NCBI GenBank assembly: GCA_965637545.1
Contig: OZ281498.1
Coordinates: 21,700,001-21,764,000, forward strand
From: Phallusia mammillata
Taxonomy: Eukaryota
DNA length: 64,000 nucleotides
Reading direction: 5' to 3'
The translations under genes were made by a program, and so were the position numbers. Below are positions 4,201 to 37,922 of this stretch, one piece after another. Under the pieces are notes generated by a model, which was given only the letters and a program-made list of their open reading frames with translations, ran no database searches and had not been told where the DNA came from. Every line of letters starts with the position of its first letter. Positions within the stretch are counted from its first letter, which is position 1.

Positions 4201-5781
4201 GCTCAGTCATACATCATCATGACCTCATCATGCATCAATCTGACATTTATGTTAGTAATCTATCACATATATATTGCTTTTGTTTAACAGTTCAACTCAC
4301 AATTCTGCTATTGATCATGTTTTGAAAGTGTTTTTTTGTTTGTTTGTTTTAGTCTTCAGGCATATTTTAAAGAAATGTGCCATCAAAAGGTTGACATCTT
4401 CATTCAGTTATTCGCTGTTAGTTTTTCTTGTGTGCATACACAGTACATATATACACAAGTTCCCTGATACATTAGATACCACTGTGAGCAAAAATAAAAT
4501 CCGCAAGCTGTGATCACACACCAGTTTATATGTGAATGTGCTTATGCATTGAGGATGCATGAGCAGACACCCTTAACCTATATGTATATGTATAAAAAAT
4601 GTGTTGAAATAAAAATGTGGTGTTTTGTGCAGTATAAGTTTAATTTTATCTTACCCTTGAATGTTGATGAGAATGTCACTACCGGGATCATGTTGGGCAC
4701 TGCTTGCAGCCCGGACTTTCGCTACGCATTCCTTTTCAGCACTCGCCGCTTCTCTCTGAGCAGCTTGAAATGAATTCAAAACATCACTAAAATCTCCCAT
4801 CAGTCTTTCAGTCTGAGTCTTCCTATGTCGCTGGGGGTAAAAATAATATAAGTCACTAATTACCTAACCATCTTTATTTTCAAAAAGGGTATTCTCTAGT
4901 CCTATTTTTAAAATTTTTGGGGGGAGCGGTAGTCATTGTGCCAACCTCGCCCTCTGATGGTTAACTCTTTTTTAATGTTTTAAAAAAGTCTTAAGACCAC
5001 AAAGGGGTTAAGAAATAAACCACTGGTCAAAAACTAATATTTTTAGGGCAGCCAAAGAAAGGAATCATTAAAGCAACTATCACAATCACAAACTTAGACC
5101 AACCTGATCACCAGGGTTTCCGACTGATGGAAGTGATTTTATTTCTTTTAAATTCTTGCTGGTGTCTTTTGCAAGTTGATTTGTGTAATGTTGCCGTTGA
5201 TGTCTGTAAAAATACTCAGATTAAAAGATTGCATCAACCAATACCCACAACCACATGTGATAGTATTAGGCTATGATGAGAATTGCATAATTTACCAATT
5301 TGGCATTTTTTGTACAAATACCCCATATCATTTCTCAACCACTTTACAATCCCTATGGTAATGAATGAACAACAGAATTCGTCTGTTCATGTACACAAAA
5401 AATTAACAGTTTGAAAACGAAATGTGATACATTAAACCCATAAACAAACACAACTAAATGCTTAATAGAATTAATAGTTTAACGTACAGTCTCTCTCTTA
5501 GATCTGGGGTGTCTTGCATTGATCCGAGTTGGTTCACCATTCTCTTGATGTCCTGTACTGTAATAACACAAAAATATTTAATAGTTAATGATTTCATCAT
5601 CAGCAACAAATATTAACAACTTACCATTTTGGTTAATTTTTTGAATGTTGGTGCCAACAAGTTCCGTAAGTCTTGTGTAGTCAGCATGACCATTGTTTTG
5701 GTATGAGTTGCTATTTCCATAATAGTTTCCACCATCATTAAAGCCTCCAGAAGCAGTAAGATCACCCTGGCCGTACGGCAT
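1216..5781 (-). CDS. STX7/12: Syntaxin-7/12 family endosomal Qa-SNARE, 8 coding exons, ~280 aa
   Basis: Exons 5625-5781, 5488-5557, 5104-5203, 4655-4830, 3712-3799, 2301-2373, 1532-1614, 1216-1311, all GT-AG and in frame. Habc region NVQDIKRMVNQLGSMQDTPDLRERL; SNARE motif [41 protein letters not shown]; C-terminal TM FICAILLLVILAIIIIIIVV. Confidence 0.93.
1724..2066 (-). mobile_element. tRNA(Leu/Ser)-derived SINE-like element in a syntaxin intron
   Basis: Minus strand has A-box TGGCCGAATGG (2045-2055), a variable-arm-like hairpin CTCCCGAGGAG, B-box GGTTCGAACCC (~1969-1980) and an A-rich end. Flanked by similar TGCAATTAA(C/A)CA(G/A)ATT sequences resembling a TSD. Confidence 0.55.
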
Positions 5782-15100: not shown

Positions 15101-17142
15101 TTGGAATATGCACCTTTTAGAAATACTACGAAGACAATGACACTTCAACAAACAATCACGGAGAACCTTACAACGATTACGGACAAGGTAAAAATTTAAG
15201 GCTAAATTACTGCTTCATTTTTGTGATTGACTTAACATATGAAAGTGTTCAAGCTTAAGTTTTTTTTTTATCAGAAACCGATATCCCACTTTCAAGTAGA
15301 TCACTGCCGGCACCAACCAACAACAGAAGATCTTACAGGTAAATTACCTCAAGTTTTTTATGGCAAAACTTGAAACTGCATGTAAAAATAGAGCGCCAGG
15401 CCATTCAATAGGCCTAGCTTACTATGATCCATACGTTTGTGTGTCGTGATCGCTGGTCTACATGCCATGAACGCTTTAGGGTTAATTACAGTTAGGAATA
15501 ATCGTTTTAGCTTAAAACTACCGATTGTCGTTTACGAAGGTAGTTTACCACGCAGGTTAAAAAAATGCAAAAAACAAAACTGAGAGCTTGTAATTACACA
15601 GTAAATACATTATATTGCAAAAGTTTCAACATTTTTGCAGTTGTCAACATCAGTGCAATCATCAGTTTTGCTTTTGATCAAGATTTTTGAACCTGTCTAC
15701 TGTGTTCCAAGGTTAAATTTTTTTATCCTTTTCAGAGACAATTTTGATACACCCCGTCCCACGCAAGCAACCCGACTCCAGTACACCACCAGGCGACCGA
15801 AAACTTTTACAGTGATCAAATATAAACAGGTAAAATAAGTTGTTGCGTGCAAACTGGCAGCTAACATCAAAAATTATTTTTATTTATTCAAGACGTATCT
15901 TCTATCTCATCATGTGTTTTACAGGAATACGCGATTTCCACCGACGAATGGCGCTTGTTTGACCCTAAACAGAAACCATGGCAACGGTCACCTATCCACC
16001 CAAGTCAGCAGCGTTCCATCAGCGTCTTGCCGAGCGTCGATAGAACGCAGGCGCAACAGAAGCCAAAAAAGCCGCCAGATAAAGTTTCAGACCACGAGTT
16101 ATTCAAGGGACTTCCCAAGTGCAAAATCTGCGGTTGCTTTGCAAATGGCGCGGGCCCTGGGCTTTACTACGCACAGACGGAATACAAAACCTTGACTGAC
16201 ACAAAAGCGATGCCCGTGAAGTCACTATGTGGGGTTGCAGAGCCCGTGGATGGCATTGATGGTGAATACTTTGATGAAGAACCCGGGGATGGATGGGAAA
16301 CGGATCGTGGAATGTTCGAGAAACAGCCGCTGCCTTTGAGGAGTATTTATTTCGGCGAAGCAAAGAGAGAAGAAGAGGAGGCAAATTTGCTCCGACGGAG
16401 GAGGATTTTGCTCGAAAGGGAAACTAATAACAACGAGATTCCACAAACCAAGGACTGCGAAGCAAATGATCATATATGTGACAACTGCTTTGACGTGGCG
16501 TCCTCTTCGTCATCAAGTGATGACGTAGATCTTAGGAGGAACGGTTTTTCGCTAGAGCGATTTCGTGCCAATCGAGACCGTGAAAGAGTAGTTCAGCAAA
16601 CAGATGCTTCAGGTGGTGCCATGAAAAAGCCGTTTGCCATGCGAGAAGTGATGTTGCTCAACCGAGCTGCTGCGGTTTTCATCTACTTCAACGGAATCAA
16701 GACGAGTCTTCGAATCAGCGCTACGGCGTTTCGCAACATGGCGCGTCGCTGCCGACTTTGCGAACAGGGTGCCATGCCTTCCATTGACATACTCTTTATC
16801 GACACCATGCGACACTGGCAGTGCTACGCACACGACCGCACTTCTCCATTTTACGACTCTTTTAAGGGTCGCAACCCCATCACAGCACACCAGCAGTCTG
16901 GGTTACCGTTTCAGGGTTTCGTCGAGGCCTTGTTCAAACTAGCGCAGACTCGTTTCAGGGGCGAAAACCTTAAGGAGAAAATGGAAGCGCTGATATCGAA
17001 CTGTGAGCTGTACATTCGCGAAGTCACCAAAGCGGACAAGAAAAAGATTCATGTCCCCGAACAGCCCTTGTCACATAGAAATCACGTAACCACTACTCCA
17101 CGTATTTCGGGGTCCCAGTCCCAGCGCCGTTCGTATTTCTAG
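9116..17142 (+). CDS. TTLL11: Tubulin polyglutamylase TTLL11, 14 coding exons, ~1036 aa
   Basis: Exons 9116-9338, 10280-10462, 10723-10835, 11330-11522, 11998-12131, 12509-12610, 12894-13064, 13689-13822, 13981-14134, 14672-14932, 15121-15187, 15275-15338, 15736-15829, 15925-17142. TTL motifs YIVKPDAGSQGEGIYL, KFDLRMYV, MHLTNYSLNK, FQILGFDILL..LLEVNSAPS. C-terminal IDILFIDTMRHW..GLPFQGFVEALFKLAQTRF resembles the TTLL11-specific domain. Confidence 0.9.
9850..10167. mobile_element. hAT-type MITE
   Basis: TIR CAGGGGTGGGCAACCT / AGGTTGCCCACCCCTG; 8-bp TSD CTTTAGAC. Confidence 0.9.
11820..11963. mobile_element. hAT-type MITE
   Basis: TIR CAGTGGTTCC / GGAACCACTG; TSD ATCTAACC. Confidence 0.88.
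13272..13453. mobile_element. hAT-type MITE (related inverted copy at 41418-41582)
   Basis: TIR CAGTGGTGGGATT / AATCCCACCACTG; TSD GATATACT. Confidence 0.9.
14241..14609. mobile_element. Degenerate hAT-type MITE
   Basis: Imperfect TIR CAAGGGTCGCCAACC / GGTTGGCTACCCCTG; partial TSD TTCTGG. Confidence 0.7.
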
Positions 17143-23900: not shown

Positions 23901-25092
23901 TTGCATTGAAACGCATCTGCAAAAAAAGTGAAATTACTTCATGGGTATTCGCACACATTGGATGTAAATTCGAAAATTTCACATGCCTAACGTATAAAGT
24001 TGGAATAGCAATTGGGTTTTGCATTGTCATGAAATATTAACGGCCCTGGTCTACGATGACAAGCGAATCGCATTTGTGGGAATATTACGGACAGGTTTAA
24101 GCATTCTGTTGCTTCGTTTCGAAGTTATACTAATGAGACATAGATAAGGTCTCCAACATCGAAGAGTAAATATCTACTATCAACCCGACCAAAGGTTAGC
24201 AAGTGCCATCTGTTATTTTTACACTGCAAGTGCTTTTGCATGAATTTCCACACACAAAAAAGCTTGTGTTTATCAACCATACACGGGTTTTAAGGTGTAG
24301 AATTTGTTTTATTTCACCTACTTTAAACAAAAAATCAGGGTCAGTGGACAAAGTTTAATATGAAATATACGTCAAAATTACTTCCAAATAAAAAAGTAAA
24401 AGGTTTTAGATAGCGTAGTGTTTACTGGAGATGTGCTATTCACTCGAATTTTTCCATCGTGGTCTTGGTAATAAACGCGCACTTTTATTTTAGTCCGGTC
24501 TATGGAACTGGTGGATTTTTTAATCAACGAAATGAACTTGTTTGAAATAGCGGAACTCGCGACCTTGATGTGCTGAAAAGTAATTGCACACCCGAAATCG
24601 ATATTCGTGATTGCGCGCGACTCCTTACGTAAAAATATTAATCAGGAAAAGCAATCCGAAGGGACAATGTAGAGAGGCAATGGACGGCGTTGACCCCCCG
24701 CTGGACAACACTTCATACAGGTTGGTAATTAACAGCAATAGTGTGGAGTGCATGGCCGTTCTCTCTCTCTCACTCTCTCCGGCCCTGCTGCTGGGTTTTT
24801 GTTACCACCGCGCCGTCAATAAGCTGGATCGGCAAAGGCAGATAGCCATATGCCGTCCGTGTCGCCGCTGCTAATAAAGATACAAAGCGGGAGGCGTTTG
24901 TCCGCGAAAGAGCAGAGCACTTTCTCTCTCTCTTTTCACAGCGGGTGCATACTTCGTTCAATGCAAGGGCACACGCGTGCTTCTAGCGAAATTATCTGTG
25001 CTCTCATGGGGCGAGCGGTAGAAAAAAAGGGGACGAGGCTTTGAATGAAATAAACAAGAAGCGGTGCAGATGTTTCACTAGCCGGCGTTCCC

Positions 25093-25099
25093 TATAAAA
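25093..25099 (+). promoter_or_regulatory. TATA box of the miR-124 host transcript
   Basis: CTATAAAA ~30-35 nt upstream of Inr-like CCATCGCAGTT, followed by an exon ending in AAG|GTAAGC. Confidence 0.65.
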
Positions 25100-26940
25100 C
25101 GGCAGCGGTCCATTGACTAACCATCGCAGTTTGCAATCAGCACTCAAACAAGCAACATCCACGGGAGCAAGATTTAAACAGCAAAGGTTTTGTGGCGAGG
25201 CGCGTTTTCAACGCTGAAAAATGAAAGATGGAAGAGATAAAGTGGATGTCTTCAACGGGAAGTGCAAACCTAAGGTAAGCTTCTGCAAGTGTTTATACGC
25301 ACTAATTAGCGCAACCTGAAGTATAACTTCCTAAAAATGATCTCTTATATAAAGAATTTCGCAATGTGCGATAACCTCTCAAGACCTTTCGCATTTAGTT
25401 ACCGTGAGCACCGTGCACTCTAATATAATAAATTTTACGAGAAACTTAACAGAATATTCGTATTAACCAACGGTCTAACGTGGTTTTACATAAGATGACT
25501 TATAGCATCGGGCAAAACAGGTGGCGCGCCGCTGGTGGGGTAACAGCCGAAAGACGCACGATTTTGGGTCGATATTGCGAAGTGAGCGGCACATTCCGAA
25601 AAGTGCGACGTTGCATAATTGATAAGCAAGCCTAAATGTCACTTGCCAAAGAAGGAAACGGGAGTTCCTTCCCAACCAGCCGACGCTCACGTACAAACTG
25701 TCGGCTGTGGCCGCCCGTTGCCACCAGCAACCGATGAATAATTGATTTAAATGCTCTGACGTCACCATAGAGCCTTGCAACGGCTTCACTAAATCATTAG
25801 AGTCGCCTGAGCCGTTTTTCAAAAGTCAAACTTCGAGCCGCTTCTATAAAAAGACGTTTTAAAAGGAAAGGGGTCGTTGAAAGCTTTCTTGGATAGGCGC
25901 TTTTAAATCTTGGTGCTAGTGGTGGTCAAGAAAGGTCGCCTTTCGAAATCGGAAAATGCCATCCGAAACTTTAATTAATTAAAATAGAAAAATGTGTTTA
26001 CAGCACAAGCCAATTTAAAACGCCTAAGCGACATAGAATTATCAGATTATTTATCGTTATCTTTCTTTCGACAGATGGCAAACTGTAGATCAAGCCGATG
26101 ACATAAGATGGAAAGCTGCGAACAAACGGTAAGTTTAGATTTTTTGCAACAGTTCTAGCACGCCCAAATTTAACTGCCAAGGACATTTGTACTAAATCAA
26201 TAAGCGCAAATGCAAAGGACATGTGCTTATGGTCTGGCAGGTGAAAACGGCAGTTTCAGCACCAGGCTGCTTGCACTAATTGGGTACAGGGACAGCTGCT
26301 TTACGCTTAAAAATACCAGTCGTACCCGTTCGCCCACATAGAGAAACATGTGTATGTAAGCAAAAAATCGATACTTGCACATTGTGTAGTTCACAATTGT
26401 ATTTTAAACCAATACCCTGGCACATGTTTAATTCTAAACGATTTGAACTTGAAGCGGTGGTAATAATAAGCGCAGCTGATTTTAATCAAAAATTAGATCA
26501 TTGGTCCGTAAAAGTAAATTTTAAAATAAGGCCAAAGCCATTTAGTTTCTATTTTCGCACCATAAACAGAAATCACAAGAAACCAATTAGCCCAGAATTA
26601 AGTTCCTCGTAGGATACGAGGCTCTAATAAGACGCTGTAATCTTTGCTGGTATACTGTACTCTCTCACAGCATCCAACGAACGATTTCATTGTTTTAAGA
26701 CGCGTGACCATTGTCCGCGTATTCTATAGTTTGGCCGCAAGCAGGACGTCTCTACAATTCGCTGCGTGATAAGTTTATTGTCTTTAAAGCCCGCAATTAC
26801 AGAACATGGCGAAAAGCAAAAGAAAAAAGTTGCCCCGATCGGTATAAATCACGCCTCCTAGCAAATAAAATCATTCCAATCATTGGAGTTGATCTAATCA
26901 GCAAGAATACTGGCAAAATGATTGGTTGTTGCTAATGGCA

Positions 26941-27013
26941 TGTTCCGTGCGTATTTAGTGTGTGATCCTTACTGTTTTATACAATAAGGCACGCGGTGAA
27001 TGCCTGCGGAACA
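26941..27013 (+). ncRNA. mir-124: pre-miR-124 copy 1 (mature 26985-27006, UAAGGCACGCGGUGAAUGCCUG)
   Basis: Exact 20-nt miR-124 core on the 3' arm; flanks TGTTCCG / CGGAACA close the hairpin. Confidence 0.95.
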
Positions 27014-27119
27014 CTGCTACGTACATCACCAACCAAGCAATGGATGTAGTAGATGAATTTGAGGCAGTTAAGCCCAATTATAGTGGAAACAGGGCCAGGC
27101 TTGACTGCAAAAAACGGCA

Positions 27120-27189
27120 TGTTTTGCTCGCGTTTGCTGTGCATCTTACTGCGTTTGCACTAAGGCACGTGGTGAATGCCTGCGAAACA
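27120..27189 (+). ncRNA. mir-124: pre-miR-124 copy 2 (mature 27161-27182, C10U variant UAAGGCACGUGGUGAAUGCCUG)
   Basis: 19/20 match to the miR-124 core with intact seed; TGTTTTGC / GCGAAACA close the hairpin. Confidence 0.9.
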
Positions 27190-27294
27190 CTGCCACTTAC
27201 AACACTAACCAAGCACTGGTTGTAGTCGTAGATGAATTTAGGGCCTTTTAGCCCAACTCTATAGGAGCAACAGAGTTGACTGCAAAAAACGACA

Positions 27295-27364
27295 TGCTTT
27301 GCTCGCGTTTGCTGTGGATCTTACTGCTCTTGCATTAAGGCACGCGGTGAATGCCAATAAAGTA
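27295..27364 (+). ncRNA. mir-124: pre-miR-124 copy 3 (mature 27336-27357, canonical UAAGGCACGCGGUGAAUGCCAA)
   Basis: Exact canonical miR-124-3p; 5' arm CGCGTTTGCTGTGGATCTTA resembles miR-124-5p; TGCTTT / AAAGTA close the hairpin. Confidence 0.95.
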
Positions 27365-28331
27365 CTGTCATAATCTTCATGTGAGAAATATAGATTCAGT
27401 TTGGAGTCTATAAAGCTGACACAGCCAATTTGTACCCTATAGGCTAGAATACATTTGGCCGTATTATTGAAAATAAGCTTTTAAAAAACCATACAAAACC
27501 AGGAACACACATTTTCCTGTAGATGTATTTTTCCACACAAAAAAACTTGGTCTTGCTTACCTTTCAAATGAATAATCCTGATTAGCTGGTTAAAATTGTG
27601 TTTCTTTTTTTCAGGTTTGAGACCCGTTGAAGTAAGTTCCAGCCTACCTCGAACGGCTCACAGAGCACCGTTCTTCGTTTCCTGCAAGTTCCAGCCTTTA
27701 GCAATCCAGCTTTAAGGCAACTGCACAACTCAACAACAACTTACAGAACCCAGCGTTGACCCAACAATCAATTTGTAGTCAGCATTGTGCGTTTGACAAT
27801 CACTCAGTTTAGACTTTTTTCCTAAACAATTCTGCGTTTATTCGTAAACAATACCTGGTTAAAAGTTAAGACCGGACATTTTGTTTGATAGCATGCCCAT
27901 AAACTAGTTTAAGAATACTGTTTTAAAACCACTTTTCTTCATGTAATGTATCATATTGCTTTCTCCCTTGAGTTCCAACAAACAAAGGTTAACTTTGGTT
28001 TTGTAAATTCTTGATGTATTATAATTATGAGTGTTGTCTAAGTGAGAACTAATATTTCTGCCACCAACTTCTTCAACTAGCTATCATGTCTGTTCATGAG
28101 TTCCATTCCGCTCCGTTTGGGAGCTCACCTTTGTATATGGCACGTGACTTTAGTCTACAAGCAGCCGTGCTCGCGTTTGCTGGTACACTCACTGTGAATC
28201 TGTGCTTTGCAAACTAAATATTGCAAAAAAACTACATTTTGATCTTAAATTTTCTGCCGTTTTGAGATTAAATTTATGTTTAGATTTGTACAAAGTTAGA
28301 AAACCTTTCTTTTGTGTGCTTCACTGTGAAA

Positions 28332-28440
28332 TGTAAATACTTTACCTTCTTGGATCAGTGCAATACTATCTGTACATACATACTGTATATACTTTTATAT
28401 CAACCTTGTACATATACTTTTGCGTGGAACTATGTAAATA
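28332..28440 (+). promoter_or_regulatory. Cluster of five Pumilio response elements (UGUAHAUA)
   Basis: TGTAAATA 28332, TGTACATA 28371, TGTATATA 28384, TGTACATA 28407, TGTAAATA 28433. Confidence 0.6.
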
Positions 28441-29281
28441 AACTAACCATAATAAAAGGATAGTGCTTCTATATTGGAGACCGCTTGTCGTTTGGAGAAC
28501 TTGGGCAGTCAACTAGTCATAAATTATGCAGAAGTAATGAATCACTGAAATGGATGTGGTTACATGCGGTATAAGAGTAAAACAATTAATTGCGTGAGTC
28601 AGGTCATAAAGATCAACTGTAAATGCGTAGAAAAAAGGTTTTGAAAATAGATAACATGGTAAATAATTATTTTCTTTTTAATCGAATACCGAACCCAAAT
28701 CTTTGAAATAAAAGCTTGCAACAAAAACGGTTTGATTTTTCCATAAAATTATTTTTTTTGTTCACTTTAACGTAACATTAAGAAGAAAAAGATCAATAAT
28801 TTTACGGTTCATAAAATAGCAAGCGGTTGTCCTACAATCTGTGCTTTACTGGTTTTCTGGCATTTTTGACGACTTGTTTTAAGTTCCCATCATATAGTAC
28901 AAAAAAACACGTTCTAAATTTAAACAAAAGAAAACGAACAAGCGGTACAAACCTAATTTGAAAATACCACAAACATAACCCGTGTTTTGAATTATGCAAA
29001 ACTTATTCGTGTAAAATGGCAGTGACAGCTGTTTAGCACTCTGAGAATTGTTTCTCATATAGGCAACTTAATATTGGTTCAAACACTTACACAAAAATTT
29101 ACACATAAAACAATATTATGTAACTTAGTTGAAACCTTTTTCATGTACAGAACGATTTTCTCCTGTTTGTAATACCATAAAAATTCCACTTACTAACGGT
29201 GCCTACGTTAAAGGTTGAGCAAACACGCCCAGTACTTTACATTAAACACAACACCACCAGCCAATCATGTCAGCTTCTCAT

Positions 29282-32200
29282 TCACAAATCCGTTTCATCA
29301 CAATCCCACTCCATAAAGTCGCTTGCTTCCTCGATGACGTCACTGCCTCGAAACGGAATGACGTATTCTATTGGGTTTGGACACTTGAGGGCGTTTGGCT
29401 GTTGTGGAGTATGTCGTGATTGCGGGGTTGAGGATAACGAGGAAATTATGCTTCCACACTGTGCTGCCGTACTGTCATTGGACGACATTGTCGCATATCC
29501 GTCTTCTTCAGTTTCGCAAAAATTGGTTATAGTGTCGCCACTAGAGACGCTCCCGTGCTCTTTGTCCCAAGTTACAGTCCCTTGCGACGTCGAATCGCTT
29601 TCTGATGATTGGTCGTCGTCCTGGCTGCACCGGGAAGCTCCGAACGGGGCTGCACCAGTTGGGACTTTATCGGATGTTGCTGATGCAGAGTACTTATGAC
29701 TGATCTTTTGCATCTCTTGCAGCATCGTCCTTTTGATTTCATCTTGATGCTGAACGAGCGATCGCAGAAAATAATCCGAAGCGCTCGGGATCACGCTCGG
29801 ATTGGGTGAAAGGTCAACACGTGACTCTTCCACTTCCGTAATCCCGCTAGTCATGTGATTGCTGGCCCTTTCCGCCTCATTGAGATTAAAGGTAGGGAGA
29901 TTTTTAGTTTTCTCGTTTGCGCGAGCCGCGTGAATTGGATAGTTCTTCACCGGGGTGCTAGACAGAAAAATGTCGTGAGGACCAATGACATCATCAAGAT
30001 CGTCGTCGTTTTGTGGCGGGAGATTTTCCACAAGCGGTGCACGAGAGCCCGAAGCAGTTTGATCTTTTAATGCGACTTTGTGAGGAATGACGTCATGAGT
30101 ACTAATTTCCGTTTGATATGAGTTTACTCTCGTTGAAATGAAGGCAGATTTATGAATTAGTGGGTCATGGTCCAACAAAGAATTTGATTTTTGGTCTTTT
30201 TGGATCGTATAAACTGTTTTCACCTCGGTCTGCTCGCTAGGTGTCTCTGTTTGAGCCTTGTCATCTAATTCAGCTAAATTTTCATCCGGCCAAAGATTTT
30301 CATAGTTCGGTTCGCATTTTTCCGGTTTTACTTGAGCTTTGTTACGTTCCTGCAAATTCTTTTTCATGTGTTGGAGTCCAGCTACGCGAGCATACGATGG
30401 ATTATCGCCTCGATTTTGTACTCTTGACTTTATGAGGCGGTGAAATTTTCGCGATGACGTCACTGAGTTGGCTGTGCTTGAGGCATCGGACTTTATCTTG
30501 ATGTTTTCCAAAGTGGAGACTTGGTTAGTGGTTTGAATTTCTTTCTCGTTTTGGTCGTTGGTCGGTAACGTTTCAGGTTTCAGCGAAGACTGAAAAAGAT
30601 TTATTTAGGTTGGGTTTGCTGTTTCTCAAGAACACAAACTTTTCGAACAGGCAGCTGATATTGGTTTATTTCTTTAATGCTAAAACTCTAGTTATACCCA
30701 AAGATTGTACGCATGATTTGGTCTGAAAAAATTTCCCCTTTTTTCGTTTCGATTGCACATGGTAAATGGTTATGCTGGTGTTTCAACTTAAACCTTATGC
30801 GTAAGTTGACCACTGTCCTGGTGACATATTACAGTTTTTTTTAAGACCGCTTCCACTACACATTGTTATTTTTTCTGATTTGTTCGTAATACTAGCGTAT
30901 ATTAAAGCACCAAAACAAACAAAACATAAAAACAAAGTTATATTATCACAATTGTTTTGGTGTATGCTAAGTTATGTTGTACAGTTTTGCGTTGATAAAG
31001 CTAATCGAGCAATAAATCAATAGAAGACAGTGAATAAACAAACAAAAAACTCAAGCTTACGTCGTTCACAATTTCTTCATTATGATCATACTGTTGCTGG
31101 TTGCTTGCAAGGTCGCTAAGTTTTTCCAAGCGCAGAATCCTCGTCCTCATCCGATGAAGAAGGCGATCGGTTCTCGCACTCCTACTCCTGTCGCAGCCGA
31201 TGAACGCCATTAGTTAGTTATTTGTTAATGTTTATAGTATTCTAGGTCTGTTTCCAGGCAGCAAATTCACTGTTCCTGAAAATGTTATATTCTCTTGTTA
31301 AAATAGACCTATATTTGTTATACTGTCAACTCGGCTCTCAAACTCAATTCACCTCAATCAACAAACTCCTCCTACTGCATCTGAACGATCCTCGTATTGC
31401 TGCTCTGTATCGAATTGTGAAACAACTGATGGTTACTTTTTACTGACCTCTCGATCTTTGTTAATAAGACTGTAATGCTTTCGAATCTTGTAGGCTATAA
31501 AATTAGATTGTTTGGTCTACAAGCTGACAATGAACAAATTTGCTTCTGTCTTTTAAGGCAAAAGTATTTTAAGACTTTCAACTCCTCTGCTGTCTTGACA
31601 AAGCTATTGTGTTTCTTTCATCCCACGAATTGAAACCACGTAGCAAAGAATATTGTCTGCTCTGCAAACTGACACTGATACGTTCTGAAGTTGTACTTCA
31701 CAGCATATATGCTTTGGATGGCATATAAATTCAGAAAATGAGATCAGGCGACAAAGGAAACTTACCTCGAGACTCGTCTACTGGTGTTGACTTTGTCTTC
31801 GCCTAAACACAACAAGCTCGATTCAATATTTCAGGAATTTAAGCAGATGTTTGGAAAAAGGCCAAGCTAATAGTTTAATTCCTACTCTTCACAAATCATT
31901 AAAGGTGTATGACGAAGTTTTTTGTTTATTCCCTTTATAACTTATATACAATCAAAATGACTCATACTCAACAGATTTAGATAAAAAACATACAGAAGTG
32001 AATAAAGGTATGAAATATTTCATTCAACCTTAAACGCAAAAGTTGGACTAAAATGCAATAAATTGTAGGGGATAGTCCTACTCGGATTTTAAACAGCGAT
32101 TTATTTTAAGAAGTTGCCTAATAAAGGCTAATAATGGTTTCGTGGATTTCTAGCAACCTACTATCTTCACTTTAGAGTGATCATAATGATGATATTTATT

Positions 32201-35200
32201 CATATTTTTTATATTTTACCTGTGGTTTTGTAGGAACTGAAGATGCCAGTTAAGGAAAGTATCTATATTCCATGTAAATTTATTGACTGATTCGGTTACT
32301 TGAAAAATATTTTCGATCCTTATTTATCCTTACTTTTGTATTTATCGCTAATTTTCATAGGGCTCAAATGAATCGAAGAAAGGTCTGAATCACTAAAGCA
32401 ACGACGTGGTTGAAATGGCGACGGCCCAGCTTGTTTTATCGGCGAAGGCTTCGGTTTGGGATCTGGCGGTGCAACCACACTAGAGGGCGCTGTGCTGGTC
32501 TCGGGCTCTTGTGCACTGAATGCAAATATTTTGTTGATTTTATCAAATACAAATTTACAGGTACAAAAAGCATGCAAAAATTAAAAATATATGTGACTAA
32601 AGTTTGATAAAACAGCAGCATGTCCTTTAATGGTGCAGAATGGGGCAAGTCTAATCCTTTTGAAATATTTATAAATCAATCGACTATGTATTTGCATATT
32701 GCACAGCGATTGCAAAATTTTCAATCATTTCTACGATATTGAGTGAAGCTATTTCACATTAAACTCAATTTAAAGTGGTATTATCGTTGAGAAAAGAATA
32801 AAGCCTTTTCCTCGTTTGCAATGATAATTTTACCCCCACTTAGCTGATGCAATCTTCTTAGCTTATATAGTCTTTATATTGCAATATAACTTTCACTTAT
32901 AATAACCAATACATGAAATTATTTGCAGACAACGAAATTAAAAGATTTAGGCATATACCTTTCTTCGACGTTGCAATGTTGGGGTACGTCGCTAGAGGGC
33001 GATAAATCACCCAAAAGTTTCTCTCTGGTTGGGGAACTTTTCTTTTTAGGAATTCCGGTAGCAAAGCGTAAACATTGCGCCATGTTACGTACTGGTGATG
33101 ACGTAGATATGTACGGATAATTTCGTGCAATGACCTCAGGAATCTGAAACGCAAGTACATTTTTAACGTAAATATTAGTAGGCTGTTAAAATATGTACAA
33201 AACTAAACTCCGTTTGTGACAAAATTCTCACTACAATTTGTTTTGTAGCTTAAAATAATCTTCAACTAAGAGTCCTAAGCATTGTCTTATAAAGGCATCT
33301 TTCCCAGTTCAGACCAATTGATATAAAAACTCAGAGAAAAAAGCGAAAATTACCGATAAAGTTATTGGCTACTAGAGAAGGAAATGTTAATGTCTGAATC
33401 TTTTCTTAAGAAATCCTGAACTGTCAAAAACTTCCCAACCTAAAAAATCTCGACTTAATGCACATCTACTTGCCTTGTCCGTTGCAACTCCAGTTAACAC
33501 GAAAGTTCGACCAAACGGCAAATCTTCACAACATGAAGAAGATTTGGCATGAAAGTTTCCTCTGCTTGGGTTATCTTCTCCTAATCAAAACATTAGCAAG
33601 TTTCAAATAGTACAAAAGTAAAAGGTCATTAGCATATAACAGTATTCAGCTGGGTATATGCTATAACCCATAACCCATAGTTCGTAAAAACAAAATTAAA
33701 AAAATGAATATCTAACTTTTCAAAGAGTTTTCTGAAAAAAAGACTAAAACGAAAATACGAACTAAAACACTTTCTTTGACGATTTTAATGCGTTTTTTCA
33801 GATTTGTTTGACTTTACATGCCTTTTCAAAGATGTAGAAACCGTGCAAAAACCTTAATTTAAGCAAGGGCCTGTAGACCTAAATATATACATCAGACGCC
33901 CAAAATGGTTAGAAACATCCGGCAAAGCAACATGTTCTTAAACTTATTTTTCCGTATAACCAACCGCTAACCTATTTTCATGGCGTCCAGCAACTCTGTT
34001 TCAACACTTAAGGTTCGATCCAACAATATCCCGTCCGATCTTGTTCTTTTTCTGCGATCCAACTCGAGATTTTTTGGCTCGTTCTCGAGGGACATTATTT
34101 TCACAGGTTTTGCGAAGTGACCACTTGTTTCAGGCGGCTTTGCTGCATCTGTACGAGTGAATTTAGTTCAGTAATTTTTCTACAAATGTGTTACAAACAT
34201 CTTCACAAAAACAACGCCCTAAAATAAAATAAAAGCATGTGTCCAATAATTCTTGAAGTGTGAGGAACAGATAAGTTTGAAGATCAAAAAAATAAATAAA
34301 TCAATTTTTCTTTGACTCACATCACGCCAGGCCTGCAGTACAAAATACCTTAATTAACATTAGATTAACCCAACCTTTAACGCACTTCGGTACAGCAAAG
34401 CAAAACTGTTAGCCTGTGGTGAAGTTTAAAACCACGACAGTTGGGCACATACAAAAAATCACAAGCAAATAATTAAATTAAAAACCTTTTTCCTCTGTAT
34501 TTGTTTGTGGTTGGTTAGAATGTAGACGAGTTCCCACAAACGAGGATTCGACTAACTTTGGTTTGGGTTTAATTGAAGAAGTTTCGTCTTTCCGATTTCT
34601 TATTCCCCTTCCGGACAAACATGAATATTGGTACGATGATGAATCCCACTGGGGTACGCCGTTCTCAACTGGTATCTCTTCTCTGACGAAAGATATGACA
34701 TAAATAAAGCTGCGGAGCTCACACAGCAGATAGATATTTGTTTTGTTGGATATTTGGTATTCCAATAACTATTCCAATAACACTATTCTGAGAATAATAA
34801 TAAAAAAAAGAAGATATTTTTTAAGAATTTATTTTACTGCAAGTAGGGGTGTCCAGCTCTTAAAACTCTTTCTTTTGACTCAATGGGCACAATAGCCACT
34901 TTGAGTCAAATAAGAACCTGAAATGCGAACGGCAGTAGAAAAATGTTCTATGCCATGTTCTATGTGTTCATGATTGCTTGGGCGATAAAATCAAAAAAAG
35001 CCTTGTTCTTTAAATATTTGTTCGTTCAATTGAATGTATGTCCGACATGCTTGGCAAAAAACGGTGCTAGTTTTCTTTTACAAAACGTCGTTTGCCTTCA
35101 ATAACAAACTACGTTAACGTTAATTGGTGGAAAAAAAAACAGCCATACGTTGTTCGGGCGGCAACTTACTTGGTTTGAATGTGTACAAGAACTTTGCGCT

Positions 35201-36293
35201 GCTCCGATTTACGACGAGGATATCGTTCATAAACGTTGATCTCATCCATTTTACGACTGTCGACTTCGTCTTTGCTCGTCGCAATAGAAATATTATCAAC
35301 ATCCGCCTGCAGTAAGATTTCCATGTTTGTTGAGACCGCCCTCCGTTTCTTGCCCTTTTCATCCGATTTTGATTTTCTTGCGAACAGATTCTTAAAACTT
35401 AACATTGATCGACTGCGGCGCAAAACAGGAGCTTGTGGGTTCGATTCTAGTCTCTCGTCAAGAAGATTATCAGCAGATGAGCACGTTGCTTTTGCTTGCT
35501 CCGTTTTTAATTTGTTTCTCGCTGGTTTGGCTGGCTTCGTTTTGCTTTCTTGCGCCTTAGCTGATATTTCAGTTACATTTTTATCTTCGCTAACGGCCGC
35601 CAAAGGCACACAAGGTTGCTGTGATGTGTTCTTAACATCCGGACAGCGTCTAGGACTGATTCCCATTTGTGAAAGCTGGTTCTGCTGGCGTAAGGATTCA
35701 ATACAGTCCATGGAAGCTGATTTGTGTATATGCAGCGGCCCGACACCGGAAAAAGACACCGATTTTCGGATCGCCGATCTTAGCTTGGAGCGCTCATGGA
35801 AATCGTTCAACTCCACCTTAAGTGACGGGTCCTTGGCTTCGTTGAGGGACTGCTCGTCGACGATGATGACACTGTCTTCCGCGAAGTACGCACTGCGGTG
35901 TTTTGATTTTAAATTACCGACGCCCTCGACATGCTTTTGCCTTAAAACGGATCGATTGGAGCAAGCAACGTCGGACTTGTGTCTCGCAACGGTCGCTTTA
36001 CTTTCGCCAAGTTTTCTTTTTTCTTTCTTTTTGCTTCCCGAGGAGAAAATCGACTTCCACCACCTCCTCTTTCTCACCTCCTGCTCCGCTTTGCTCTTCT
36101 TGTCGCTTTTCTTTAAACTTTCCTTTTTTTCATCTTGTTTTGTTTTCGACGCTTGTTTTTTTGATGAAGCTTGACTTATTCCATTGCTGAGGTCATTGCG
36201 AGAGCGATGGATAATTGTGGAACTTCTTGCGTCGGCGGAACGGCAAGTCAGGAAACCGTAGTCATCGCAACCGTTGTACGTAATAATAGACAT
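29282..36293 (-). CDS. Uncharacterised low-complexity protein, 9 exons, ~1147 aa, C-terminal ETDL
   Basis: Exons 35170-36293, 34486-34682, 33972-34148, 33474-33580 (GC donor), 32959-33143, 32334-32515, 31766-31802, 31061-31187, 29282-30589 join into one open frame. S/K/E/P-rich; no domain recognised; start codon uncertain. Confidence 0.75.
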
Positions 36294-37922
36294 AACTAAC
36301 GCATGTAAAAAAATTCCCGTTCTCACGTGATCATACTGTCTTTAAAGGGAAACTTAGCAAATATTTTACTGCAAATAAAAGGTTCTTCCCAGCCTTTTTT
36401 TCAACAAACAAAAAATAAATAAGCTTTAGGTATGAACCATAACTATTGGGCATTCACGTAGTTTACCTAAAACCGGATTTTTGCTTTAATGTTACTGTTG
36501 TAAAACATAAAAAAGAACATCATACAGTTTAACTGTCAGCCAATGTTCAATACATTTTAAAGTTTAAGAATAATTGATTAGCTTAACCGAAGCACAAATA
36601 TAAATTTAAATTAGTTCATTTATTCAATTTAATCTCTAAATTAGTTTTTCTCTGTCCTATTTAAAGTCAAAATATTTCGATACTTAGTAGGCTAAATATA
36701 CTATGTCAGCACAAACACATTGCTGGCACACATCACAACAAAGTCTGAAAAAACTTCTTCTTTCATTATGAAGTATAGGATCGATAATCTGGCGCGGCAA
36801 CGAGGTATGGAGCGCCTAATTTAAGGGCCCTTGGACGAGATAATAGGAGATCTCTACCTACATTTCTGTTACACAGTCAAAACTAATCAATAACAGACAC
36901 TGAGTTAAAAGCTATAATGAGTCTAACGATACGGCATTACTGAATATTTTTCTTTATATATATAATGTTATTTAACTGTATACTCAATACCGTACCTTAG
37001 TGTGCTCATTGTACTGTGTTTCTATTAAATATTCTCTTTGTAACGACCAAACGTAATTCTGTATAGGACTGTAAAGTTTTAGACTACTCTAAAAACCAAA
37101 AACTACGTCCAAATATTACAGTGCACACAAGGTAACGTATGGTTTGTCACACAAATCTAGGGATTAAGGACCTTTTTGTATTCGAATCATACCATTAGTG
37201 TCCATCGCGAATGGTCGAGAGAACTGCACTTCCTCTCAAGCCTTTATTGTTTCCACAACCAACAGTTTAAACTCTCACTAACATTTTTCTAATTACAACT
37301 TAGTTAAACCTCATCAAATGTTCAACCAACTAGGAAGCAAAACAACCCAACGCCAGCCAAGTTAATCCTAATGTTCCAAAGGTATTGTGACATCACAACA
37401 TGTCTTTCCAAAAGGCCAAGTGAAGCAAATATGACTCTGTTAGCTAAATACAGTCTTTCAATAGACTTACAAAGAATGCAGTTTGGGGCATAAAGTATTG
37501 TGTAGCACTTGGTGAGACGTAGTTTTGAGGGCACTCATCGCAATCGAATGCCATTGTTTCGAGCCTATGGTTCACGCTCAACGAGCCAGCAAAATTGTGC
37601 AAGTCGATTGGTAAGATTTTGTTTGAAACTTACCGATCAATAGACTTCACAATTTTCTTTGATTAAAAAGTGAACACAATTTTTTCTTGATATTGCATTT
37701 GAAACTGTTACTACTTTTTTAAAATACAACGCGTAAATACACATTTAAAAGTAACTTTGGGAAATATTTGGTTGTATTCTACGTTTGGTGCCTTTTAAAA
37801 ACGGTAATTATCAAACATTTCTTTTTAAAAGTAAATAAAGCACCTTAAATGCGGCAGGACGCATTACCCCAATTTAAAAAAATAAATTATGTTGGGCCTA
37901 TCTTTAAATTATTCCCAGCACC

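What the first reader, a model, noticed from the sequence alone, without database searches (positions are those of the whole stretch)
26941..27364. Three tandem miR-124 hairpins hidden in the intron of a nearly non-coding gene
Seen: miR-124 mature sequences start at 26985, 27161 and 27336 (period ~176 nt), each on the 3' arm of a hairpin, and the two spacers are clearly homologous. Known, from recall: miR-124 is the pan-bilaterian neuronal miRNA, and Ciona has two tandem copies in an intron of the neural gene Pans. Inference: this is the orthologous locus, with a lineage-specific expansion to three copies. None of this shows in the ORF track.
Basis: partly seen in the sequence, partly recalled or inferred. 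Interest (0 to 1): 0.8.

Follow-up and report, generated by a model that had tools for sequence, protein, structure and literature searches.

The report
Three tandem miR-124 genes in intron
A sea-squirt genome carries its only three copies of the neuronal microRNA miR-124 head to tail inside the second intron of a spliced, almost non-coding gene built like Ciona's Pans; the middle copy arose by unequal crossing-over, so this is a well-supported but unsurprising variant of a known locus.

Summary
miR-124 mature sequences start at 26985, 27161 and 27336 (+), where chance predicts none, and they are the only three in the 240-Mb genome. Each lies on the 3' arm of a stable hairpin that Rfam scores as mir-124. 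One copy passes the gathering score; the other two fall below it but have E-values of 1e-6 or lower.

Contigs from three cDNA studies define a host transcript. Exon 1 is about 25136-25274, exon 2 is 26075-26128 and exon 3 is 27615 to about 28466. The ORF is 26 codons, and the hairpins sit in the 1486-nt second intron. Ciona Pans is described the same way: a 22-aa ORF with two tandem miR-124 copies in intron 2.

An independent 2018 DNA contig spans all three copies without a gap.

The middle copy has the 5' arm of copy 3 and the 3' flank of copy 1. That pattern indicates unequal crossing-over between two older paralogues. Two other tunicate-like contigs share the upstream TTLL11 exon, and each holds only two copies, one of each type.

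The middle copy carries C10U, which keeps the seed and forms a G·U pair. I could not examine small-RNA reads, so processing of each copy is inferred. The scan had already noted the chimera on this same window (s1-546552).

Verdict: a new member of a known kind, of modest interest.

The parts
15955..17142 (+). Last large exon of TTLL11 (EF_TTLL11 domain). It is the upstream neighbour and served as the synteny anchor.
   Evidence: 63% identity to Ciona intestinalis TTLL11 (H2XQ27) over 129 aa; the hits carry PF27858. The same exon lies 10-12 kb upstream of two miR-124 hairpins in L004/L007 and L009.
25093..25099 (+). TATAAAA box, about 37-43 nt upstream of the first base held by a cDNA contig.
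   Evidence: Sequence read. The X6 cDNA contig starts at 25136, directly after adaptor letters (tables 7 and 8). That this is the promoter is inferred.
25136..25274 (+). Host transcript exon 1. The 5' end is approximate. It holds the first ATG at 25221 and 18 codons.
   Evidence: X6 record 13 covers 25136-25272, and the joint to exon 2 has GT..AG ends once shifted by 2. Sequence.
25275..26074 (+). Intron 1 (800 nt, GT..AG).
   Evidence: table 5: the joint is seen in X6 and X8, which come from two studies.
26075..26128 (+). Host exon 2 (54 nt). It holds 8 more codons and a TGA at 26099-26101, giving a 26-codon ORF in all. The stop lies 27 nt before the last exon junction.
   Evidence: One search gives joints on both sides; sequence. 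I read the ORF across the junction by eye.
26129..27614 (+). Intron 2 (1486 nt, GT..AG), which holds the three hairpins.
   Evidence: table 5: the joint 26127/27614 (cut +1) is seen in X6, X8 and X16, which come from three studies.
26941..27013 (+). mir-124 hairpin 1 ('a-type'). The mature 3p sequence starts at 26985.
   Evidence: 43.5 bits; -36.7 kcal/mol, z -5.1. The 5' arm is 84-86% identical over 51 nt to the first copy in L007 and L009; alignment.
27014..27117 (+). Spacer 1, homologous to spacer 2.
   Evidence: 3' flank plus spacer are 84.3% identical (K2P 0.18), with three small indels.
27118..27189 (+). mir-124 hairpin 2, a chimera with a copy-3-type 5' arm and loop and a copy-1-type 3' flank. 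The mature 3p starts at 27161 and carries C10>U at 27170.
   Evidence: 38.4 bits; -30.4 kcal/mol, z -2.7; 5' arm plus loop are 88.6% identical to copy 3 against 68.6% to copy 1; the 3' flank is 40% identical to copy 3. In the Rfam alignment the C10U position is not flagged as a non-standard pair, i.e. it forms G·U.
27190..27292 (+). Spacer 2.
27293..27364 (+). mir-124 hairpin 3 ('b-type'). The mature 3p starts at 27336.
   Evidence: 50.6 bits, above the gathering score of 49; -30.7 kcal/mol, z -4.3. Its 3' flank ..AAAGT is shared with the second copies of L007 and L009.
27615..28466 (+). Host exon 3 (about 850 nt). Its longest ATG ORF is 43 aa. AATAAA signals lie at 28437 and 28451, and five UGUANAUA motifs lie at 28332-28440.
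   Evidence: X16 record 1 covers 27614-28466 and X6 record 13 reaches 28427. ORFs; motifs.

Best explanation
This is the single miR-124 locus of an ascidian, which by its TTLL11 similarity is not Ciona. A TATA-type promoter near 25093 drives a three-exon, polyadenylated, almost non-coding transcript with a 26-codon ORF in exons 1-2. The gene plan matches Ciona's pan-neural gene Pans. Its 1486-nt second intron acts as a polycistronic pri-miRNA with three mir-124 hairpins, 176 and 175 nt apart. I infer that Drosha/DGCR8 crops each hairpin from the intron and that Dicer then releases a 3p miR-124. Copies 1 and 3 would give the canonical sequence. Copy 2 would give a C10U variant with the same seed and therefore the same seed-matched targets. 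The third copy was created from an older two-copy state ('a-type' followed by 'b-type', as in Ciona and in two other fetched species). The mechanism was unequal crossing-over between the two paralogous hairpins, with the exchange inside or next to the shared mature sequence. The product is a middle hairpin made of a b-type 5' half and an a-type 3' half, plus a duplicated spacer. The most likely effect is a higher or more robust miR-124 dose per host transcript in neural cells. Shown here: the three hairpins, their uniqueness in the genome, the spliced host transcript, the copy number in an independent DNA sample, the chimeric make-up, and two-copy outgroups. Inferred: processing of each hairpin, neural expression, the dosage effect, and orthology to Pans.
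For: Mature sequences and chance level. No other copy in the genome. Rfam mir-124 matches. Folds alone and in context. RNAalifold over seven hairpins from three species gives 29 pairs, 12 of them with compensatory changes, mostly in the basal stem. Host transcript: GT..AG joints 25274/26075 and 26128/27615 in cDNA contigs from X6, X8 and X16, and absent from DNA run X2. No ATG ORF longer than 43 aa in exon 3. Copy number: X2 record 9 (2018, a different study) covers 26004-27681 with 4 substitutions, no gap and no difference inside a hairpin, so C10U is present there too. Intronic cDNA contigs stop at 26940 (X6) and 26943 (X8) and resume at 27370 (X16). No cDNA contig covers 26944-27369, although the intron has no repeated 21-mer or longer that could break an assembly. 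This fits cropping of the hairpin block. Chimera and duplication. Two-copy, TTLL11-linked loci in two other species. The Ciona Pans description.
Against: No small-RNA reads were examined, because the single reads call went to contigs. Processing of any copy, and of the middle one in particular, is therefore not shown. Contigs cannot show RNA ends, and the intron depth is only 4-10, with other holes present, so the 'cropped block' signal is only suggestive. Copies 1 and 2 score below Rfam's gathering score. Copy 2 has the weakest fold z-score (-2.7; 3 of 200 shuffles fold as well). Hairpin arms differ less between duplicates than spacers do (2/44 against 18/115; one-sided Fisher p = 0.045). However, both arm differences lie in copy 2, so constraint on that copy is not demonstrated. 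The Ci-Pans sequence and the Ciona locus could not be fetched, so orthology is by architecture only. The host exons show no nucleotide similarity to the other two species' loci.
Confidence: 0.8

Rival explanations
1. Only the two outer hairpins are productive. The middle chimeric copy would then be a by-product of unequal crossing-over that is poorly processed or slowly decaying, so the locus works as a two-copy cluster like Ciona's.
For: Copy 2 has the lowest Rfam score (38.4 bits) and the weakest fold statistics (z -2.7). It carries the only change in an otherwise invariant mature sequence. Both arm differences between duplicates fall in copy 2, close to what neutral drift would give.
Against: The C10U change gives a G·U pair, and the 5'-arm G>C change lies in an internal loop, so neither breaks a pair. 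The basal stem of the chimera is fully paired. The hairpin forms on its own within the 501-nt context. The duplicated units have diverged by about 15%, yet the hairpin is intact.
Confidence: 0.25
2. The host transcript is not an orthologue of Pans. On this view it is an unrelated or independently evolved non-coding host that happens to carry the miR-124 cluster in an intron.
For: No sequence comparison with Ci-Pans was possible. The host exons have no detectable similarity in the two other species' loci. miRNA host transcripts turn over quickly.
Against: The match to the published description is detailed: three exons, a roughly 20-aa ORF at the 5' end, and tandem miR-124 in the second intron. 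This is also the only miR-124 locus in the genome. The a-type and b-type hairpin order and the TTLL11 linkage are conserved across very divergent species, which argues for one old locus.
Confidence: 0.1
3. The third copy is an assembly artefact, that is, a mis-expanded tandem repeat.
For: Tandem repeats are a common source of assembly error.
Against: An independent 2018 DNA run has one contig across 26004-27681 with no gap, and five DNA-type runs from three studies hold 90% or more of the sampled words. The units are only 86.5% identical and share no 21-mer, so they cannot be collapsed or expanded by k-mer ambiguity.
Confidence: 0.02

Closest known systems
Ciona Pans / miR-124 locus (KH.C7.140; cin-mir-124-1 and -2)
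   Same: A nearly non-coding, spliced host gene with a tiny 5' ORF (22 aa in Ciona, 26 codons here). Tandem mir-124 hairpins lie in the second intron, with the mature sequence on the 3' arm.
   Different: There are three hairpins here instead of two, and the middle one is a chimera of the outer two with a C10U mature variant. The species is not Ciona (its TTLL11 domain is 63% identical). Neural expression and miR-124 function were shown in Ciona and are not shown here.
Halocynthia roretzi miR-124 loci (PMC5399378)
   Same: This ascidian also has three predicted miR-124 hairpins on one scaffold. Two of them are in close tandem, about 209 nt apart.
   Different: In Halocynthia the third copy is about 8 kb away on the opposite strand, not a third tandem unit. 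All three listed mature sequences keep C10. No host gene is described in the passages I read.
Two-copy, TTLL11-linked miR-124 loci in unnamed species (L007 and L009; ENA assemblies ERZ21736675 and ERZ25067576)
   Same: The same strand and order as here: the TTLL11 EF exon, then 10-12 kb, then an a-type hairpin followed by a b-type hairpin.
   Different: Two copies only, 1832 and 460 nt apart. The 3' ends of the mature sequences differ from the canonical one (GAAUAUU and GAAUACU instead of GAAUGCC). The organisms are unknown and no transcript evidence exists.
Vertebrate miR-124 genes in non-coding host transcripts (for example miR-124-1 in Rncr3/LINC00599). This comes from my own knowledge and was not checked here.
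   Same: miR-124 is made from a neural, largely non-coding RNA polymerase II transcript.
   Different: Vertebrate copies are dispersed single hairpins left by genome duplications, not a local tandem array.

Membership tests
mir-124 microRNA precursor (Rfam RF00239) | Mature sequence UAAGGCACGCGGUGAAUGCC with the seed AAGGCAC | tested here: met
   copies 1 and 3 are exact, and copy 2 has a single change at position 10, outside the seed.
mir-124 microRNA precursor (Rfam RF00239) | Mature sequence on the 3' arm of a hairpin of about 70 nt with the family's stem and bulge pattern | tested here: met
   All three align to model positions 1-72. Folding energies are -30 to -37 kcal/mol, and compensatory pairs are seen across seven hairpins.
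mir-124 microRNA precursor (Rfam RF00239) | Score at or above the curated gathering score (49 bits) | tested here: inconclusive
   Copy 3 scores 50.6 bits and passes. Copies 1 (43.5) and 2 (38.4) fall below but have E-values of 3.6e-8 and 1e-6 in the local search.
mir-124 microRNA precursor (Rfam RF00239) | Production of a roughly 22-nt RNA with a 5p/3p duplex and 2-nt overhangs | not tested
   The single reads call was used on assembled contigs, and no small-RNA library was laid. The hairpin block is missing from the intronic cDNA contigs, which is only indirect evidence.
Pans-type miR-124 host gene (Ci-Pans) | A spliced transcript with a very short ORF that is otherwise non-coding | tested here: met
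   with sequence. There are three exons, a 26-codon ORF from the first ATG, and no ATG ORF longer than 43 aa in exon 3.
Pans-type miR-124 host gene (Ci-Pans) | Tandem miR-124 hairpins within the second intron | tested here: met
   One search places intron 2 at 26129-27614, and the hairpins lie at 26941-27364.
Pans-type miR-124 host gene (Ci-Pans) | Sequence similarity or conserved neighbours with Ciona KH.C7.140 | not testable with these tools
   No Ciona genome or Ci-Pans sequence was within reach. Chen 2011 and Alfano 2007 are not held, and the Ciona TTLL11 protein is not on record for a locus look-up.
Pans-type miR-124 host gene (Ci-Pans) | Pan-neural expression from early embryogenesis | not testable with these tools
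   The run descriptions are coded, and contigs give no tissue or expression level.

The most novel reading that the evidence does not exclude
The chimeric middle hairpin is fully processed and gives a genome-encoded C10U variant of miR-124, a microRNA whose mature sequence is otherwise almost invariant across bilaterians. Its basal stem, assembled from halves of two different paralogues, would have been kept paired by substitutions after the crossover. That would make the locus a dated natural example of how a new microRNA paralogue is born by unequal crossing-over inside the mature sequence and then begins to diverge outside the seed.
Probability: 0.35. Interest if true: 0.45.

Novelty: new member of a known kind. 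Interest (0 to 1): 0.3.

Why it matters
The finding gives a clean gene model for the only miR-124 source in this ascidian: promoter, three exons and intron boundaries. Such models are usually missing from protein-centred annotation. It shows that the Pans-like host plan and the a-type then b-type hairpin pair are old features of tunicate miR-124 loci. It also documents a simple mechanism, unequal crossing-over within the conserved mature sequence, by which the copy number of a dose-sensitive neuronal microRNA changes. For people working on ascidian neural development, it says that knock-down or deletion designs here must remove three hairpins. It also says that a probe or sensor for canonical miR-124 may not report the C10U form equally well. 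It does not change what is known about miR-124 biology.

Tried and rejected
1. Protein searches with the downstream neighbour (the 409-aa ORF at 29282-30511, minus strand) found nothing, and Pfam found nothing in three neighbouring ORFs. That side gave no synteny anchor. tblastn of the two downstream ORFs against the fetched loci was also blank.

2. I tried to fetch the Ciona locus through Ciona TTLL11 (P0007), but the protein is not on record. One look-up was lost to a wrong end coordinate.

3. A third species' contig (L006/L008/L010) has the TTLL11 exon but no miR-124 within about 23 kb downstream. The short JGI and Logan contigs (L011-L015) reach 3 kb or less downstream and hold none.

4. 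Two metagenome scans for tandem miR-124 pairs with periods of 162-192 and 193-223 nt found nothing.

5. A nucleotide search for conserved host exons in L007 and L009 found only the hairpins.

6. Chen et al. 2011 and Alfano et al. 2007 are not held, so the 22-aa Ci-Pans peptide could not be compared with the 26-codon ORF.

7. [quoted passage not shown]

8. I considered whether the hole in the cDNA contigs over the hairpins is a repeat-assembly artefact. I rejected this because the intron has no repeated 21-mer or longer.

I read the ORF across the exon 1-2 junction directly from the sequence.

Full report
**Observation**

The 19-nt core of miR-124 occurs three times on the + strand. It starts at 26985 (exact), 27161 (one change, C>T at mature position 10) and 27336 (exact). 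Dinucleotide shuffles of the window gave no match at all. The spacings are 176 and 175 nt.

These are the only copies in the 240-Mb genome. This holds for the pattern with up to two mismatches and for the Rfam mir-124 covariance model. Rfam scores:

| Copy | Interval | Bits | Local E-value |
|---|---|---|---|
| 3 | 27297-27362 | 50.6 (above the gathering score of 49) | 3.3e-10 |
| 1 | 26943-27011 | 43.5 | 3.6e-8 |
| 2 | 27122-27187 | 38.4 | 1e-6 |

All three align to the full model with the mature sequence on the 3' arm.

Folded alone, the hairpins give -36.7, -30.4 and -30.7 kcal/mol, with z-scores of -5.1, -2.7 and -4.3. In the 501-nt block all three form as separate stem-loops in both the MFE and the centroid structure (z -4.8).

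**The host gene**

I laid assembled contigs from four public runs of the same organism on 24000-29200. Three runs from three different studies (X6, X8, X16) contain spliced contigs.

- One joint removes 25275-26074 (800 nt, GT..AG).
- A second joint removes 26129-27614 (1486 nt, GT..AG).
- The DNA run X2 has neither joint. The three runs are therefore cDNA, and the transcript runs on the + strand.

Exon 1 begins at or just before 25136; adaptor letters precede it in X6. A TATAAAA box lies at 25093-25099. Exon 2 is 26075-26128. Exon 3 runs from 27615 to about 28466, just after AATAAA signals at 28437 and 28451.

The first ATG, at 25221, opens 18 codons in exon 1. Eight more codons and a TGA follow in exon 2, making 26 codons in all. 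The stop lies 27 nt before the last junction. Exon 3 has no ATG ORF longer than 43 aa.

All three hairpins therefore lie in the second intron of a spliced, polyadenylated, nearly non-coding transcript.

**Comparison with Ciona**

Pans/miR-124 is KH.C7.140, its predicted protein is 22 aa, and two tandem miR-124 copies lie in its second intron. Expression of both Pans and mature miR-124 is pan-neural (bioRxiv 10.1101/2023.12.20.572557; PMC4377283).

The plan found here matches feature for feature, apart from the copy number. I could not obtain the Ci-Pans sequence or the Ciona locus. Orthology therefore rests on architecture and on this being the genome's sole miR-124 locus.

**What kind of genome this is**

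The ORF at 15955-17142 (+), 8 kb upstream of the host promoter, is the last large exon of TTLL11 (EF_TTLL11 domain). Its best named relative is Ciona intestinalis TTLL11, 63% identical over 129 aa. This fits an ascidian that is not Ciona.

**Copy number is real**

A single contig from an independent 2018 DNA run covers 26004-27681 with four substitutions and no gap. None of the substitutions lies in a hairpin, so the C10U change is present in that sample too. Five DNA-type runs from three studies hold at least 90% of the sampled words. The three units share no 21-mer, so k-mer assembly could not have created or collapsed a copy.

**Origin of the third copy**

| Comparison | Identity |
|---|---|
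| Copy 2 against copy 3, 5' arm and loop | 88.6% |
| Copy 2 against copy 1, 5' arm and loop | 68.6% |
| 3' flank plus spacer: after copy 2 against after copy 1 | 84.3% |
| First 40 nt of 3' flank: after copy 2 against after copy 3 | 40% |

The middle hairpin is thus the left half of copy 3 joined to the right half of copy 1, and the switch lies within or beside the shared mature sequence. That is the expected product of unequal crossing-over between two paralogous hairpins, a-S-b, which gives a-S-(b/a)-S-b. The scan had already noted this reading on this window (s1-546552); I tested it here.

The whole units are 86.5% identical (K2P 0.15), so the event is not recent. I cannot date it without a rate or close relatives.

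**Outgroups**

Using the TTLL11 exon as an anchor, I fetched loci from other assemblies.

- In a 1.5-Mb contig (L004/L007), two mir-124 hairpins lie on the TTLL11 strand about 9.9 kb downstream, 1832 nt apart.
- In a 441-kb contig of another assembly (L009), two hairpins lie 11.8 kb downstream, 460 nt apart.

In both, the first copy shares the 5' arm motif ..UGUGUGAUCC.. (one base different in L009) and the 3' flank ..GCGR with copy 1 here. The second copy shares the 3' flank ..AAAGU (AGAGU in L009) with copy 3 here. The a-type and b-type pair, its order and the TTLL11 linkage therefore predate the split of these very divergent species, whose TTLL11 exons are 38-40% identical. The two-copy state is the older one.

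A third species' contig showed no miR-124 within about 23 kb. Halocynthia roretzi is reported to have a tandem pair plus a third copy 8 kb away on the other strand (PMC5399378). Three copies are therefore not unprecedented in ascidians, but the arrangement here is different.

Over the seven hairpins, RNAalifold finds 29 pairs, 12 of them with compensatory double changes, mostly in the basal stem. This supports selection for the fold.

**Is each copy used?**

This is the weak point. The one reads call went to contigs, and no small-RNA library was examined.

Indirect evidence comes from the low-depth intronic cDNA contigs. They end at 26940 (X6) and 26943 (X8) and resume at 27370 (X16). None of the three runs covers 26944-27369, which is the hairpin block. 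This is what co-transcriptional cropping would leave. However, contigs cannot show RNA ends, and the intron has other holes.

For the middle copy:

- C10U pairs as G·U, and the only 5'-arm change lies in an internal loop.
- The basal stem built from two different paralogues is fully paired.
- The arms differ less between duplicates than the spacers do (2/44 against 18/115, p = 0.045). Both arm differences are in copy 2, so constraint on that copy is not shown.

I put the chance that copy 2 is not productively processed at about one in four.

**Mechanism, as best supported**

A neural RNA polymerase II transcript is spliced into a stable, nearly non-coding RNA. Its second intron serves as a tricistronic pri-miR-124. 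Cropping and dicing would give canonical miR-124 from copies 1 and 3, and a same-seed C10U form from copy 2. The extra unit would raise the miR-124 yield per transcript. The transcript, intron position, hairpins and duplication history are shown here. Processing, tissue and dosage effect are inferred from what is known of mir-124 and of Ci-Pans.

**Verdict**

This is a new member of a known kind: the Pans-type miR-124 locus, with one extra chimeric copy. It is useful for annotation and is a tidy example of microRNA duplication by unequal crossing-over. A specialist would not be surprised by it.

Noticed in passing
window 28332-28440 (+): Five UGUANAUA (Pumilio-type) motifs lie within 110 nt at the very 3' end of the host transcript, just before the poly(A) signals. 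They are 5 of only 16 such motifs in the 64-kb window and form its only cluster. No such cluster lies downstream of miR-124 in L007 or L009. This is already a separate note of the scan (s1-546547).
   Followed up: partly
window 15955-17142 (+); L004 10001-11164; L009 16356-17309 (-): The last exon of TTLL11 (EF_TTLL11 domain) lies 8-12 kb upstream of the miR-124 hairpins, on the same strand, in this genome and in two very divergent species' contigs. This points to an old TTLL11-miR-124 linkage.
   Followed up: partly
L007 9694-9763 (-) and 7862-7926 (-); L009 matures starting at 4551 and 4091 (-): In these two unnamed species the miR-124 mature sequences keep positions 1-17. They end ..GAAUAUU (first copy) and ..GAAUACU (second copy) instead of the canonical ..GAAUGCC.
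   Followed up: no
window 26944-27369 (+): Intronic cDNA contigs from three studies flank the hairpin block but none covers it, although DNA contigs run straight through and the region has no repeated 21-mer. The pattern resembles a footprint of Drosha cropping, but contigs cannot prove RNA ends.
   Followed up: partly
window 29282-30511 (-) and 35166-36326 (-): Two long ORFs (409 and 386 aa) lie tail to tail with the host gene. They are serine- and lysine-rich, have no Pfam family and have no homologue in the protein search. They may be exons of one fast-evolving gene.
   Followed up: partly
window 26099-26128 (+): The stop codon of the 26-codon ORF lies 27 nt upstream of the last exon-exon junction. 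That is within the distance usually tolerated by nonsense-mediated decay, which fits the high depth of the spliced contigs.
   Followed up: no
L006/L008 12928-13086 (-): A called 52-aa gene in this ENA contig contains an in-frame TGA, so its caller used a non-standard code or a read-through. It is probably a spurious call on eukaryotic DNA.
   Followed up: no
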